NCBI GenBank assembly: GCA_002104905.1
Contig: MCFE01000010.1
Location: 186,001 to 250,000, forward strand
Length of the DNA stretch: 64,000 bases
Source of the DNA: Basidiobolus meristosporus CBS 931.73
Taxonomy: Eukaryota; Fungi; Basidiobolomycota
Reading direction: 5' to 3'
Position 1 is the stretch's first letter, and the number at the start of each line of letters is the position of its first letter. This document shows positions 39,946 through 45,314 of this stretch, in pieces. The notes beneath the pieces are model-generated. The model ran no database searches. It saw nothing but the letters and a program-made list of their open reading frames with translations, and was not told where the DNA came from. The translations under genes and the position numbers were made by a program.

Positions 39946-40445
39946 GTACATGTGCGTGCCACCCTACCGTATGCTTGTTGCTCGAATAGGCAGAACCTGA
40001 AAGACATGGTTGGCGAAGGGGCCAACCTCCCCTACATGTCGGCTATGGGGGTGCGCTCCAAGGTTGACAGGAGAAACTCATAAATGATCAGCTAGAGATA
40101 TTTGACAGCCAGTTCAATTCATAAACTTGATGTTGGTCTACATCTATAGTATGGTGAAATCATATTATTCTGACCAATTAGAGGCCGGTTTAATGCACCC
40201 AAGGATAATCGAGTCGAAGGTGCTTTCTTAATTCCTTTATTGTATACGACTTCAAAGTGACTAAATGCCAATATTTTCCTCAGAATTCCTTGAAGGTCTA
40301 CGAACTGTTGAAACAAAAGAGTTCCGACCAATCAGCCCTCGATCTGTAGCTGCAAGCTTAAATACTAAATGCATTTCAATTTATTCAGTAGCTAATCCTT
40401 TCTTTATTTCTTACTTGACTTCTATACATCATAATTCCTCTCACC

Positions 40446-43400
40446 ATGGCTGAAGAGGTTGATGATTTTGGAGATCTGACCATTGACGATGACTTTCTGG
40501 CTGCTCTAGACAAGATAGAACAGCAAGCAACCTTTACAGCTCCCAAGAGCCGAACCATTCCAACATCAAGTAAAATGGTGCAGTCACAGATAGCTTTCGC
40601 CAATATATCCCCACAGAGTACAAAGAATCAGAATATTTCAATAGTGCGCGACTCCGGCGTAAAGAAGAATATAAAATTACATGTAAAGTTATTCTTTATC
40701 AGAATGGCACATCAGTTGGTAACTAAAAGTTTAACGACTTTATCTCGCAATTCACCTAAGCTACACGATGATGGGAGATTGAAGTCGATGAAGCCTACAC
40801 AAAATGCCGGTGTCTGCAAAAATCCTAAGGTTCAAAAGACTCTTTGGGATATGTTTGACGTTGATAGAGAAAGCTCTAGTATGTCTTCAAAGCGCATTAA
40901 AAAGTCATCTGTGAGTTTTCCCGCAGTAATGCAGAGTTCCAATGTTTCTAACACTTCGCTCGCATAGAGGATGTTTAATCTAAAGCATACACCTGATTCA
41001 TCCTTGGAAGCTTCTCTCTACGACCCCAATACAATCGATACTTGGATATATCCCACTAATTATCCTATCCGTGACTATCAGTTTAACATTGTATCTAAAG
41101 CATTATTCCAAAATACTTTGGCAGCATTACCAACTGGACTCGGAAAAACATTTATTGCTGCTGTTGTTATGTATAATCACTATCGTTGGTTCCCGAACTC
41201 AAAAGTTGTCTTTATGGCTCCCACTAGGCCTTTGGTGGCTCAACAGATTGAGGCATGTCACAAGATATGTGGTATCCCACAAACAGATACCATGGAGCTT
41301 ACTGGTGCTCAACCACCCGAGAAAAGGAAGATCTATTGGCTTGCAAAAAGAGTATTTTTTTTAACACCACAAGTATTACAGAATGATTTGATACGTGGAA
41401 CATGTCCAGCGGAGAGTATTATATGCTTAATTGTGGATGAAGCGCACAGATCTCGCGGCGATCATGCAAATTGCGTAGTAGTAAGAGAGCTTCATTCTAG
41501 AAATCCACTTTTTCGAATCCTAGCACTTTCAGCTACACCTGGAACGGATCCATCTTCCGTTCAAGATATTGTTAACAGTCTGATGATATCTCATATCGAA
41601 ATTCGAACCGAAGAATCCCTAGATATACAAAAATATACTCATGGCAGAAAGATCGATATTATTGTGGTTCCTTTTTCCAATGCGATCAATGAGATCTCTC
41701 AGCAATTTTGTGCTTGTATGGAGCCTTATATTTCCCGACTGCGCCGAATGCAAGCAATATGGGAAAGAAATCCGCAAAAAATATCCAAATATATGCTAAT
41801 ATTAGCGCGGAATAAATTCCGAAGTAGCTATTCGGTTATCTCTCAAGATCAAAGAGCTACCGTTGAAGGAGACTTTGGAATCTGTCTTATACTGACGCAT
41901 GCACATAGTCTCTTACGTCAACACGGGATACGTTCGTTTTATAATGCACTTGTTGACATGATCCAAGAAGCAAAGGATGGAAAGAAAATATCTCGAGCTC
42001 GTCAAGATTTACTTAAAAACGAGACATTCATTGACTTACTGAACCGCGTTGAAAGCATGCTAAACGAGGCTGCATTTAGTGGCCATCCCAAACTAGAGAA
42101 ACTTGTCTCTTACGTTGTGAATTATTTAAACACCCTGAAAAGCCAAGACAAAAACCAAACGCGGATAATGATATTCACAGAATATCGAGAATCGGTTGCA
42201 GAGATCGTGAAGGTATTAAATACATGTTTCCCCTTGGTCAGGCCTATGTCATTTGTAGGACAAGGGTCAAAGAAGACTAAACGAGGCTTCACCCAAAAAG
42301 AGCAAATGGCAGTTCTGGAGAGATTTAAGCAAGGTGGATATAATGTGATTGTCTCGACATCTATCGGTGAAGAGGGTTTAGATATTGGTGAGGTTGATCT
42401 CATAATATGCTACGATTCACATAATTCGCCAATTCGACTTCTGCAAAGAATGGGACGGACTGGCCGAAAACGCCAGGGCAAAGTATGCATGCTTTTGTCG
42501 GAAGGGAAAGAAGAGCAGATGTACAGACAATCCCAAAATTCATACAAATCAATCCAGCGTGCCATTGCTAGCGGCTCTAGAATATCTCTATATGATGGCA
42601 GCCCGAAGTTGCTGCCAGAAGGTGTAAATCCAGTATGTATCAAGAAGACCTTGGCTATTTCCCTGTACAAAAAAGATAAGGAGGTCAATGGCATACAATC
42701 ATCAAACCCTGATCAGAACTCAAGTATGAATACGAATGAAGATGATGATATTCAAAAGCAATATACTCAATTTCTTAACCGGTTTAATAAGACTGAAACT
42801 TCCAGTATTTCGCTTACCAAATTTCATAAGCAACAAACCGTACCAACTAAAACGGGGATAGTATCGCACTCACAGCGGACAATTGATTTCGTGGACCTTA
42901 TGAGTGCCATGGAGACGCTGGGATTCATTGGTAACGAGGAAGATCATTATGGCTTTCAGCTACAAGATTATTTAAACTTGAATAGCACCATTCCCTTGAG
43001 AAGGAAGCATCAATTTGAGCCGCTACTGCATCTGAAAACATTTCAATATACAAAAACGAATGAGCCATCAGCTCATGCAAATACATGCAAGCCTATGCGA
43101 CATAAGGTTGAAGAAATGGTTCCAGAACTAGAAGATGATGCAGATGACTTTATGATTATGCAAGGCTTTGAAGGGATCTTCGACGAGAGAGATTCTAAGA
43201 AATTATTTATGCAATCACTCTCCCCGACAAACTGTAAAGACTCCAAAGATTCCTTTAACACGTTGAAATCCAAAAAGGTTGGCTCTACCGAAGACCATCC
43301 TATTATGATAGATATGGAATTTATGCAGAATAGCACACCAGGTCAGAAAGACCTTAAAGCAAACATATCAAATTCATCGCCTAGTTCGGCAACCAATACT

Positions 43401-43904
43401 GTCACTATAGATGACTCTTTAGAACAAGAATTAGTAGCACTTGTTGATTCCCGCGAATTTATGCAAAATTATGCCCGACAACCAACCAACCCTTCCAAAA
43501 AGCAAGAACCCCACGAAAATACAAATTCATTAATTGGAGTATCCTCACAACAGCCAAACTATCATTTGAAAGTGAAGGACAACAGTCCTCAAGTGGAGAT
43601 CTCAGGTGCATCTAAAGAAACGATTAAGAGAATGAGCAGTTCTTTATCCGAGTTCGCAAATTTGAAGAAGGAAACCGCGCCAGCCATTCCGACCTTTCCT
43701 AGTGACGTGAGATTTGGGAATTGGCGAGAAATTGCCAAGATTCTATCCTCTAACCGGTCAGTAGAGGATATAAAGCACATCGATAGCAATGTAAAGCCGA
43801 TGAGTTATTTGAACTCGCATACCGTGAATACTATACCGGTTCCGATGAAGACATCAGGAAACAGCAAGTTAGATCAGTATAGATTTAAGAGACGCAGATA
43901 CTAG
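40446..43904 (+). CDS. MPH1: Mph1/FANCM-family DEAH DNA helicase, 3 exons
   Basis: YPIRDYQFNIV, LPTGLGKT, IVDEAH, LALSATPG, STSIGEEGLDIGEVDLIICYD, QRMGRTGRKR; two 5' GT-AG introns link the acidic N-terminal exon. Confidence 0.95.
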
Positions 43905-44164
43905 AATGTATCAATGGAAAATGTTGACTCAATATGGCGGAGAGATTTCGTGCTAAATAATCCACAACATAAATGGGTTTTTTGCATGCAAAACATGACT
44001 CGATTTTAAATGCCACTGTATCTTAGAATTCTTGCTTACCATAAAAATGTAAAGATTCATCTTGCAGGTCAAAGAATTATATTAAAATTGCAGTAGCAAA
44101 AATAAAGTTGAAGATGGTTTGGCTCACAAGCCAATGAGGTTTGGGGATAATTCAATACATCGAT

Positions 44165-45314
44165 TTAGGGCCAATTAAGCGGCTTCATATCGTAGGACTC
44201 ACCATCTTTTTCCCCATCCTGATAAGAGAATGGTGGTGGTGGTAAAGAAATGGCAGTATTATAATGGTGATTGGATAATTGGAATTCGACATCATCCTCC
44301 TTTTCGGATGGTTCGTAAAACTTTCCCGAATTTGTGATCCCAATGGTTTCCTGTTTTAATTGAGCTGATTGCTGTAAAGCAATCTCAACCTGGCCAACAA
44401 TGTCTTCAAATAACTCCACTTCTTGCTCAGGCAGGCTCCAGGTTTCGTCTCCCGAGTAGATCAGCACAAATCCTGAGTCTTTCCCGCCGATATTGAAACG
44501 CACTCCCATAGCTGACTTGTAGGGGAGGTTGACTCCTTCACCAACCATATCACTGAGGTCCCGCTTATTCAAGCAACAAGCATACGACAGTGTGGCCATC
44601 CGAGATACTACCTTATTATTTGCTGAGATTCTTACCCTCTGCCAGAACAGTGTTTTGTCTGGACGCTGCAGCGAGTGATCCCCAACATGCCTGTAGTCCT
44701 CGTGTGTGCATACATAAGTGTCCCCTTTATTCATGTAGATGGCGCACCCAATCCCCAGTGTCACAGAGAGCTCGAACGCAGAAGTTTGGCAGACGGAGTT
44801 GGTATCAAGAGTTCGGCGGATATGCTGAGTGACCTTTCGAAACTTGAGGAGCAGATCGTTTGCCATACGAAGTGACTGCTCGTGGCGCATATGCGACCCC
44901 AACTCTTCCTCAAGCCAGGCAGCTCGTGCAGGCAGTGAAAATGCCTTTGGGAATACTCTGATCAAGAGGGTTGCTGTGAGTGTGGATATGACTGCCGTTA
45001 TGACCTTGATAACACACAGGGCTACATCGGTGTTCGAGAATGGGTTCCACACGGTGACAAGATGGGTGGCTCCGCATGCGGTGATGAAGGCTTCAAAGAG
45101 AAGTAAAACACTTTTGTAAAGCATGGGTAGAGGCAGGGTGAGCGTTCGCTGGAAAAAGAAGATTTCGATCGGGATGGCCATGTATGAGAGAGAAATAAAC
45201 ACATCCGCCACCATAGTCACCCAAGATAGAGGGTCATTTTCTATTACTTTTGGAACCAAATGAATTAGTGGGTGTTCGAGCAAGAAGCTTGGAGATCATA
45301 CACATACTCTGCAT
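44165..45314 (-). CDS. ETR1-like ethylene-binding-domain + GAF membrane protein lacking histidine kinase and receiver domains; 2 exons (45314-45308, 45246-44165), ~362 aa
   Basis: Three TM helices with ADVFISLSYMAIP, FITACGATHL and IKVITAVIS matching ETR1 D25/Y32/I35/P36/I62/C65/H69/K91; GAF start TQHIRRTLD; stop follows GAF end QVEIALQQSA; 61-nt GTATGT...CTAAT...AAG intron supplies the ATG. Confidence 0.88.

What the first reader, a model, noticed from the sequence alone, without database searches (positions are those of the whole stretch)
44165..45314. Kinase-less ethylene-receptor-like protein: a stand-alone EBD+GAF sensor or decoy
Seen: all key ETR1 ethylene/Cu(I)-binding residues (D25, Y32, I35, P36, I62, C65, H69, K91 equivalents) and a GAF domain, then an acidic, Pro-rich tail and a stop. 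There is no H-box and no room for one, since the MPH1 stop is 260 bp away. Established: ETR1-like hybrid histidine kinases occur in early-diverging fungi. Inference: an intact ligand-binding module without output may signal in trans via GAF-mediated hetero-oligomers, act as a dominant-negative or ethylene sink, or use the tail (LPPPPFSY) as a docking site, i.e. a non-phosphorelay ethylene-sensing branch.
Basis: partly seen in the sequence, partly recalled or inferred. Interest (0 to 1): 0.7.

Follow-up and report, generated by a model that had tools for sequence, protein, structure and literature searches.

The report
Kinase-less fungal ethylene-receptor paralogue
This is a real, intact gene of the fungus Basidiobolus meristosporus for a membrane protein that keeps the ethylene/copper-binding and GAF parts of a plant-type ethylene receptor but has no kinase; it is a further, unpublished member of a small family whose first member was published in 2017.

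Summary
Window 44165-45314 (minus strand) is a two-exon gene: a 7-nt first coding exon, a 61-nt intron, then one long exon, 362 aa in all. It encodes three ETR1-type transmembrane helices with all eight named ethylene/Cu(I) residues. A GAF domain follows, shown by fold (Z 16) but not by Pfam. The protein ends in a disordered, acidic, proline-rich tail of about 55 aa and a stop. There is no kinase or receiver domain and no room for one, because the MPH1 reading frame ends 260 bp away.

The genome is Basidiobolus meristosporus CBS 931.73. It holds five intact paralogues, plus a decayed relic in this window. They come in two tail types (a and b) arranged around MPH1, and B. ranarum has the same layout. 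Non-synonymous change is about 0.09 per site while synonymous sites are saturated. The stop codon and the tail motifs are conserved across paralogues and across the two species. The gene is therefore maintained by selection, not eroding.

The kind is already known. A paralogue, Bm|388937|, was published in 2017, and a 2023 preprint described kinase-less ETRs across Entomophthoromycotina and suggested GAF-mediated output. This scan also met the family on two other pieces of this genome (s1-222138, s1-227396).

Output through the GAF domain and the tail is inferred, not shown. No RNA data could be obtained.

The parts
45308..45314 (-). First coding exon: ATG plus 4 nt (ATGCAGA)
   Evidence: All five B. 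meristosporus paralogues have ATG plus 4 nt followed by a GT donor and a 58-80 nt phase-1 intron. The published JGI model of Bm|388937| uses the same structure.
45247..45307 (-). 61-nt intron (GTATGT...AAAAG), phase 1
   Evidence: Read from the sequence. It joins the ATG frame to the long ORF frame and gives M-Q-I-I-E-N-D-P-L-S-W-V-T-M-V-A-D. No RNA data confirm it.
44165..45246 (-). Second exon with the TAA stop (44165-44167). Whole product is 362 aa.
   Evidence: Open frame. It is colinear with the paralogues without gaps up to the tail.
44915..45214 (-). Ethylene/Cu(I)-binding domain: three TM helices. Cys codon at 45074-45076, His codon at 45062-45064.
   Evidence: Pfam ETR1_N E 4.6e-22. 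All eight key residues are kept against plant ETR1. Model helices at 2-24, 31-60 and 63 onward. dN/dS about 0.03.
44804..44914 (-). Long linker helix continuing from TM3 (residues about 101-137)
   Evidence: The AlphaFold model has one helix from 63 to 133. The segment is identical or nearly so in all paralogues.
44336..44803 (-). GAF domain (residues about 138-293)
   Evidence: pLDDT about 90. VIA-align Z 16.0-16.5, rmsd 2.5-3.0 A against phytochrome and PtsP GAF domains. The 50 Foldseek hits listed (best by E-value) are GAF domains or GAF-containing proteins. Homologous regions of P0029, P0023 and P0014 hit Pfam GAF.
44168..44335 (-). Disordered acidic, Pro-rich type-a tail carrying the SLPPPPFSY and YDMKPLNW motifs
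   Evidence: pLDDT under 50 over most of the tail (298-303 and 323-349). The motifs are shared with P0002 and with B. ranarum P0006. Tail pN 0.21 against pS 0.78. DNA conservation stops at the shared TAA.
43905..44164 (.). 260-bp convergent intergenic gap to MPH1; no kinase exon
   Evidence: Stops in all three minus-strand frames. Not conserved with the paralogue or the orthologue.
40971..43904 (+). MPH1/FANCM helicase, the convergent neighbour; part of the conserved ETR-MPH1-ETR arrangement
   Evidence: Pfam DEAD, Helicase_C and FANCM-MHF_bd. The C-terminal 437 aa align to B. ranarum up to its stop. The same triad occurs in L002 and L003.
39958..40080 (+). 41-aa relic of a second (type-b position) ETR-like gene, otherwise decayed
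   Evidence: tblastn with P0002: 63% identity over residues 207-247, E 4e-13. No significant match (E <= 0.001) to any other part of the gene nearby. It sits where P0004 and P0007 sit in the other triads.

Best explanation
Shown: this is an intact, selectively maintained gene of Basidiobolus meristosporus. It encodes a 362-aa membrane protein made of an ETR1-type ethylene/Cu(I)-binding domain, a long linker helix, a GAF domain and a short disordered tail. It has no histidine kinase and no receiver. It belongs to a Basidiobolus-specific family of five intact copies in this genome, and at least two a/b pairs exist in B. ranarum. The family has two conserved tail types (a and b), typically placed on either side of MPH1. 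This copy is type a; its type-b partner in the window has decayed. Inferred: the protein still binds Cu(I) and ethylene (or a similar small olefin) in an endomembrane. It passes the signal on by protein contacts rather than phosphotransfer. Those contacts would be made by the GAF domain, as plant receptor GAF domains do, and by the conserved linear motifs of the tail.
For: Gene and domains. Organism and paralogues. Purifying selection against the closest paralogue, P0002: pN 0.093 against pS 0.78 (saturated); EBD dN/dS about 0.03; tail pN 0.21 against pS 0.78. Stop codon and tail motifs are shared with P0002 and B. ranarum P0006, and DNA similarity collapses right after the shared TAA. The GTGAGT near the stop is not conserved. 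The convergent MPH1 neighbour lies 260-400 bp away in three loci of two species. In trees, sensor DNA groups by locus but tail DNA groups by type a or b (support 100/99). Tail identity is therefore preserved while the sensor part is homogenised between neighbours. The neighbouring copy in this window decayed to a 41-aa relic, which shows what loss of constraint looks like here. Precedents for kinase-independent output: the OsERS2 GAF domain binds and inhibits the kinase MHZ1 (PMC6981129); etr1-1(1-349) signals without CTR1 (PMC3933193).
Against: No RNA run was listed, so expression, the 7-nt first exon and the 3' end rest on comparative evidence only. Ethylene and copper binding are untested. 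This copy carries 11 private substitutions at GAF positions that are invariant in the other family members, which could mean some relaxation. No partner protein is known. The tail motifs match no tested domain family.
Confidence: 0.6

Rival explanations
1. The transmembrane domain itself is the output. As recently claimed for plant ETR1/ERS1 and OsERS1/2, the receptor oligomer conducts Ca2+, so a kinase-less EBD plus GAF protein could act as an ethylene-modulated Ca2+-permeable channel.
For: Plant receptors from charophytes to angiosperms gave Ca2+ currents in oocytes, and the authors name fungal homologues as the next test (10.1101/2025.10.20.683334; PMC13261662). The EBD is the most constrained part of this protein (dN/dS about 0.03).
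Against: The claim is new and limited to plants. Neither paper, in the passages I read, shows that the TM domain alone suffices. It does not explain why two distinct tails are conserved.
Confidence: 0.15
2. Decoy, dominant-negative subunit or ethylene sink that modulates full-length ETR-type histidine kinases of the same fungus through GAF-mediated hetero-oligomers.
For: Plant receptors form heteromers through the GAF domain, as cited in PMC13261662. Truncated etr1-1(1-349) is active in planta.
Against: No full-length partner was found. The word search over 192-611 aa found only short Basidiobolus proteins. Among the 25 best hits of the exhaustive profile search, the only Basidiobolus proteins are short, and the long ones belong to other fungal phyla. 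The 2023 preprint reports that no Entomophthoromycotina ETR has a receiver and that their kinase regions are incomplete or absent. Five copies with conserved tails are more than a decoy needs.
Confidence: 0.07
3. Eroding remnant with no function: the 'gene erosion' reading of Herivaux et al. 2017 for the truncated Entomophthoromycotina receptors.
For: A graded series runs from full hybrid kinases (Rozella, Blastocladiomycota), through Conidiobolus-type proteins with degenerate kinase and no receiver, to Basidiobolus with none. One copy in this window has decayed. This copy has the most private GAF substitutions.
Against: Intact ORF. pN 0.09 against saturated pS. All ligand-binding residues are kept. 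Stop position, tail motifs and gene arrangement are conserved between two species.
Confidence: 0.05
4. A copper-binding membrane protein whose conserved role is unrelated to ethylene, for example Cu(I) handling or sensing of another small ligand.
For: The Cys and His copper ligands and the helices around them are the best-conserved part. No ethylene response is documented for Basidiobolus in the papers read.
Against: Residues needed for ethylene binding but not for copper ligation (the D25, Y32, I35, P36, I62 and K91 equivalents) are also all kept.
Confidence: 0.1
5. Gene-model artefact: the true transcript continues into kinase exons.
For: A GTGAGT donor-like site lies 28 nt before the stop. 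The public MPH1 model is short (563 aa) and leaves apparent free space downstream.
Against: The donor-like site is not conserved in P0002 or P0006, and the TAA is at the same aligned position in all three. The MPH1 frame is coding up to 43904. Minus-strand frames downstream are full of stops and give no kinase domain.
Confidence: 0.03

Closest known systems
Bm|388937| of Basidiobolus meristosporus (Herivaux et al. 2017, mBio, PMC5285503)
   Same: Same genome and same architecture: EBD plus GAF plus a short tail, no kinase. About 78% identical. Same 7-nt first exon. Lies at L001:9782-10931.
   Different: A different locus and a different tail type (b, ending in EPKYWH, against type a, ending in KPLNWP). 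The paper reports one Basidiobolus gene and reads it as gene erosion. The window gene is not in that paper, and its public model (338 aa) lacks the N-terminal Asp and Tyr.
Kinase-less or kinase-degenerate ETRs of Entomophthoromycotina (Ancylistes closterii preprint, 10.1101/2023.12.22.573025; Conidiobolus CcHHK3)
   Same: EBD with all key residues, one GAF domain, no receiver. Two Ancylistes genes lack the whole kinase. That preprint already suggested GAF-mediated output.
   Different: Conidiobolus, Neoconidiobolus and Entomophthora proteins (576-626 aa) keep a degenerate HisKA/HATPase_c region. The Basidiobolus proteins end about 55-70 aa after the GAF domain, with their own conserved tail motifs.
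Plant ETR1/ERS1 subfamily-1 ethylene receptors
   Same: Three-helix EBD with the same ligand residues, a linker helix and a GAF domain in the same order. 29% identity over 290 residues.
   Different: No DHp/CA kinase, no receiver, and no N-terminal Cys pair for the disulphide-linked dimer. The plant downstream partners CTR1 and EIN2 arose in the charophyte lineage according to the preprint read, so they are not expected in fungi; I did not search for them.
Engineered etr1-1(1-349) and the OsERS2 GAF domain
   Same: They show that an EBD plus GAF fragment, or the GAF domain alone, can transmit or block signalling without its own kinase.
   Different: These are experimental truncations or one domain of a full receptor acting in a plant pathway. 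Here the truncation is the natural, conserved state.

Membership tests
ETR1-type ethylene-binding-domain proteins (Pfam ETR1_N, PF25487) | Three N-terminal transmembrane helices matching the family profile | tested here: met
   E 4.6e-22, 78.5 bits against a cut-off of 27, model positions 2-97 of 97. Three helices in the model.
ETR1-type ethylene-binding-domain proteins (Pfam ETR1_N, PF25487) | Cu(I) ligands Cys65 and His69 in helix 2 | tested here: met
   C47 and H51 align to C65 and H69 of a plant ETR1 orthologue. The columns are invariant or nearly so across 19 relatives.
ETR1-type ethylene-binding-domain proteins (Pfam ETR1_N, PF25487) | Other residues required for ethylene binding (D25, Y32, I35, P36, I62, K91) | tested here: met
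   All are identical in the pairwise alignment. That these residues are the required ones comes from Wang et al. 2006, as cited.
ETR1-type ethylene-binding-domain proteins (Pfam ETR1_N, PF25487) | Saturable, copper-dependent ethylene binding | not testable with these tools
   Needs the expressed protein and labelled ethylene.
Plant-type ethylene receptor (EBD-GAF-kinase[-receiver]) | GAF domain after the EBD | tested here: met
   Fold match Z 16, rmsd 2.5-3.0 A. No direct Pfam GAF hit, but the homologous region in relatives hits it.
Plant-type ethylene receptor (EBD-GAF-kinase[-receiver]) | DHp domain with H-box, plus a catalytic HATPase_c domain | tested here: not met
   No hit in the protein or downstream. 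The protein ends about 56 residues after the GAF domain. Profile tests of the tail against DHp/H-box sequences were negative.
Plant-type ethylene receptor (EBD-GAF-kinase[-receiver]) | N-terminal Cys pair forming the disulphide-linked dimer | tested here: not met
   The 13 residues before the first helix contain no Cys. That ETR1 dimerises through Cys4 and Cys6 is from my own knowledge.
Fungal hybrid histidine kinases | HisKA, HATPase_c and Response_reg domains | tested here: not met
   None present. Relatives from Rozella, Paraphysoderma and Entrophospora have all three.
Basidiobolus kinase-less ETR family, tail type a | Tail with ...LSN.H..T..SLPPPP(P)FSY.D..KD.E.YDMKPLNW, then a stop | tested here: met
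   Shared with P0002 and with B. ranarum P0006. The tail tree separates type a from type b with 100/99 support.

The most novel reading that the evidence does not exclude
The two conserved tails (a and b) are a new output module that replaced the kinase. Type-a and type-b receptors, encoded side by side and kept alike in their sensor parts by gene conversion, would form heteromers. Their proline-rich and acidic-aromatic tail motifs would then recruit a cytosolic effector. That would give fungi an ethylene-sensing branch that uses no phosphorelay.
Probability: 0.2. Interest if true: 0.65.

Novelty: new member of a known kind. Interest (0 to 1): 0.33.

Why it matters
Fungal ethylene-receptor homologues are the main evidence that early fungi sensed plant hormones, and the truncated Entomophthoromycotina forms have been read as genes in decay. 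This copy, with its paralogues and its B. ranarum orthologue, shows the kinase-less form is kept under strong purifying selection, with a conserved stop and conserved tail motifs. That points to a working receptor with a non-kinase output. It also offers a small natural system for asking what an ethylene-binding domain plus GAF can do on its own. The same question is open for the N-terminal, CTR1-independent signalling of plant receptors and for the new claim that the receptors conduct Ca2+. The gain over the published work is incremental, not a new kind of system.

Tried and rejected
1. RNA evidence: the look-up of sequencing runs listed no RNA run. Expression, the 5' mini-exon and the 3' end are unconfirmed by reads.

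2. Tail as a relic of the DHp helix and H-box. YDMKPLN resembles HEMRTPLN. The Cys-to-Tyr distance (294) is also close to the Cys-to-His distance in full-length relatives (270-288). However, an HMM built from 16 DHp/H-box segments gave negative scores on all nine tails, and hhalign gave probability 0.04. Not supported; it remains only a resemblance.

3. Pfam on the C-terminal 131 aa and on the four minus-strand ORFs downstream: nothing relevant.

4. PDB sequence searches with the protein and with a family profile: nothing significant.

5. First AlphaFold run on 8 close paralogues: mean pLDDT 50 and a poor EBD. It was replaced by a run on 19 sequences.

6. Two word-index searches meant to find a long Basidiobolus EBD-kinase were uninformative. 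One was swamped by generic histidine kinases. The other did not even recover the short Basidiobolus proteins that should have served as positive controls. The absence claim therefore rests and on the literature.

7. The bacterial promoter/terminator scan is irrelevant for a eukaryote and showed nothing.

8. Complex prediction was not run, because no specific pair was well enough motivated.

9. The spliced 362-aa product was never joined or submitted to any tool. All searches used the unspliced reference window:44168-45214:- (349 aa, from the 'MVAD' Met). The first three residues (M-Q-I) are read from the sequence only.

Full report
WHAT IS THERE

The minus strand of window 44165-45283 is one open frame of 372 codons. 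A stop lies just upstream, and the first in-frame ATG is codon 24. It becomes in-phase if ATGCAGA (45308-45314) is spliced through a 61-nt GTATGT...AAAAG intron (45247-45307) onto 45246.

I accept this model because all five paralogues of the genome have the same layout: ATG plus 4 nt, a GT donor, and a 58-80 nt phase-1 intron ending in AG. Each yields a similar short N-terminus that ends in ...(S/T)W(V/I)(T/M)M(V/I)AD. The published JGI model of Bm|388937| uses this structure as well. The product is then 362 aa.

Every search used window:44168-45214:- (349 aa from the 'MVAD' Met), and residue numbers below refer to that reference.

DOMAINS

- **Ethylene-binding domain.** Pfam gives ETR1_N at E 4.6e-22 across the whole model. 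BLASTP against a plant ETR1 orthologue retrieved by the tools (Erythranthe, P0032, named 'ethylene receptor 1') gives E 3e-27 over residues 2-288 vs 23-314. In that alignment D25, Y32, I35, P36, I62, C65, H69 and K91 align to identical residues D4, Y11, I14, P15, I44, C47, H51 and K70. In a 19-sequence alignment from Basidiobolus to charophytes, these columns are invariant or nearly so, or conservatively substituted.
- **GAF domain.** Pfam's GAF models do not hit this protein. The fold evidence is clear, though. With 19 aligned relatives the AlphaFold model reaches mean pLDDT 78.9 and about 90 over residues 138-293. That region superposes on phytochrome, PtsP and sensor-kinase GAF domains at Z 15-16.5, rmsd 2.5-3.0 A, over about 150-160 residues. 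Even the earlier poor model gave only GAF-containing proteins among the 50 Foldseek hits listed. The homologous stretch of relatives hits Pfam GAF directly (P0029 3.8e-13, P0023 4e-6, P0014 6e-4). The nearest ESM-Atlas cluster is ETR1_N plus GAF.
- **Tail.** Residues 294-349 are acidic and proline-rich, contain SLPPPPFSY, end in YDMKPLNWP, and are modelled as disordered.

NO KINASE AND NO ROOM FOR ONE

- The protein has no HisKA, HATPase_c or receiver hit.
- Downstream, the three minus-strand frames are full of stops, and the four ORFs of 60 aa or more give nothing relevant.
- The convergent neighbour is an MPH1/FANCM helicase. Its C-terminal 437 aa align to the B. ranarum orthologue right up to the stop (E 3e-89), so the 260-bp gap is real.
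- The public MPH1 model (563 aa) is simply too short.
- A GTGAGT near the stop is not a conserved donor. In an alignment of the 3' ends of this gene, P0002 and B. ranarum P0006, variation is codon-like up to a shared TAA, and similarity collapses immediately after it.

WHERE IT COMES FROM AND WHAT IT BELONGS TO

The window is scaffold MCFE01000010.1 of Basidiobolus meristosporus CBS 931.73 (GCA_002104905.1). The public model of this gene is 338 aa and starts at an internal Met, so it lacks the Asp and Tyr of helix 1.

The genome has four more intact copies:
- P0002 and Bm|388937| face each other on MCFE01000683.1.
- P0004 and P0005 flank a helicase on MCFE01000106.1.

B. ranarum has P0007 - MPH1 - P0006 on one contig, and P0003 with P0012 on another.

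The tails fall into two types:
- **Type a:** ...LSN.H..T..SLPPPP(P)FSY.D..KD.E.YDMKPLNW, followed by P or H.
- **Type b:** ...L.SLRQSA..SSSPPPFS..QEYE.YD.EPKYW, followed by H or N.

The ancestral arrangement appears to be [type b, +][MPH1, +][type a, -]. The window keeps MPH1 and type a. Of type b, only a 41-aa relic remains, at 39958-40080.

SELECTION

Against its closest paralogue, P0002, the gene shows 75 non-synonymous differences over 810 sites (pN 0.093). It shows 185 synonymous differences over 237 sites (pS 0.78, saturated). In the EBD, dN/dS is about 0.03. In the tail, pN is 0.21 against pS 0.78, and the B. ranarum orthologue gives the same picture.

Trees of the sensor DNA group copies by locus (support 100/99 and 100/100). 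The tail DNA instead groups copies by type across loci and species (100/99). Adjacent a and b copies have dS of only 0.07-0.09 in the EBD but saturated tails. I read this as gene conversion homogenising the sensor part between neighbours, while the two tails are kept distinct. That pattern is hard to explain unless the tails matter.

The window copy has no intact neighbour, sits on a long branch, and has 11 private, mostly conservative changes at otherwise invariant GAF positions. This could mean mild relaxation, or simply the lack of a conversion partner.

RELATIVES

An exhaustive profile search found 4039 representatives at E <= 0.001. After Basidiobolus, the nearest are:
- Neoconidiobolus, Conidiobolus (CcHHK3) and Entomophthora proteins of 576-626 aa, with a degenerate kinase region and no receiver.
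- Then full hybrid kinases of Paraphysoderma, Rozella (RaHHK2), Blastocladiella, Allomyces, Catenaria, Amoeboaphelidium and Entrophospora.
- Then charophyte and plant receptors.

Among the 25 best hits, the only Basidiobolus proteins are short. So I found no full-length ETR kinase that this protein could act on as a decoy. This is not proof of absence, because two further searches aimed at the question were uninformative.

WHAT IS KNOWN ALREADY

- Herivaux et al. 2017 reported Bm|388937|. They noted its 'striking truncated structure' and interpreted it as gene erosion.
- A 2023 preprint found that all Entomophthoromycotina ETRs lack the receiver and have incomplete or absent kinase regions. 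It also proposed GAF-mediated action by analogy with OsERS2-MHZ1.
- This scan had already followed up the two other loci of this genome (s1-222138, s1-227396). I checked both loci myself.

The window gene is therefore a new member of a known kind. This report adds:
- the corrected gene model;
- the a/b tail types;
- the MPH1 triad and its differential decay;
- the mosaic conversion pattern;
- the evidence that this copy is under purifying selection.

HOW IT LIKELY WORKS

Shown: the ligand-binding residues and the GAF fold are intact and constrained, and the tail and stop are conserved.

Inferred: the protein is a Cu(I)-dependent ethylene sensor in an endomembrane, and its output is by protein contact. 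Two precedents make this plausible. The OsERS2 GAF domain alone binds and inhibits the kinase MHZ1. The etr1-1(1-349) fragment signals independently of CTR1.

A rival with recent support is that the transmembrane domain itself conducts Ca2+. Erosion, a decoy role, a copper-only role and a gene-model error are each less likely, for the reasons given under the rival explanations.

I also tested whether the tail is a degenerate DHp/H-box. The motif YDMKPLN sits about where the H-box would be, but profile methods give no support.

LIMITS

No RNA run was listed, and nothing here tests binding or signalling.

Noticed in passing
window 39958-40080 (+): A 41-aa remnant of a second ETR-like gene (GAF segment, 63% identical to P0002). 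It lies upstream of MPH1, where the other triads carry an intact type-b copy. The rest of that gene is unrecognisable.
   Followed up: yes
window 40971-43904 (+) and 44165-45314 (-): Both public gene models look wrong. MPH1 is annotated as 563 aa although the frame stays open to 977 aa, with a FANCM-MHF_bd domain and conservation to its stop. The ETR gene is annotated as 338 aa from an internal Met, which removes the Asp and Tyr of helix 1.
   Followed up: yes
L001:8001-10931 and L002:8001-14911: Adjacent type-a and type-b copies have near-identical sensor DNA (dS 0.07-0.09 in the EBD) but saturated, type-specific tails. This looks like gene conversion that stops before the tail.
   Followed up: partly
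window 45247-45314 (-); L001 and L002 equivalents: A 7-nt first coding exon (ATG plus 4 nt) followed by a 58-80 nt phase-1 intron is conserved in all five paralogues. Gene callers tend to miss such mini-exons.
   Followed up: partly
window 44168-44194 (-): The C-terminal YDMKPLN resembles the histidine-kinase H-box HEMRTPLN, with Tyr in place of the phospho-accepting His, and it sits at about the expected distance from the copper-binding Cys. Profile tests did not support homology.
   Followed up: yes
P0010 / P0158 (Entomophthora muscae, NCBI KAJ9061474.1 and KAJ9082166.1): E. muscae does have ETR homologues (576 aa; ETR1_N plus weak HisKA and HATPase_c hits). The 2023 preprint reported none for this species, presumably because it used an older assembly.
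   Followed up: no
window 40446-40967 (+): A 173-aa ORF with an acidic start lies directly upstream of the MPH1 ORF. It may be an N-terminal MPH1 exon or extension.
   Followed up: no
L002:281-3249 versus window 26390 and 63300 (notes s1-233582, s1-233624): The paralogous scaffold also carries an RFX gene and a P450 gene near its ETR-MPH1-ETR triad. The window therefore seems to be part of a larger duplicated block with differential gene loss.
   Followed up: no
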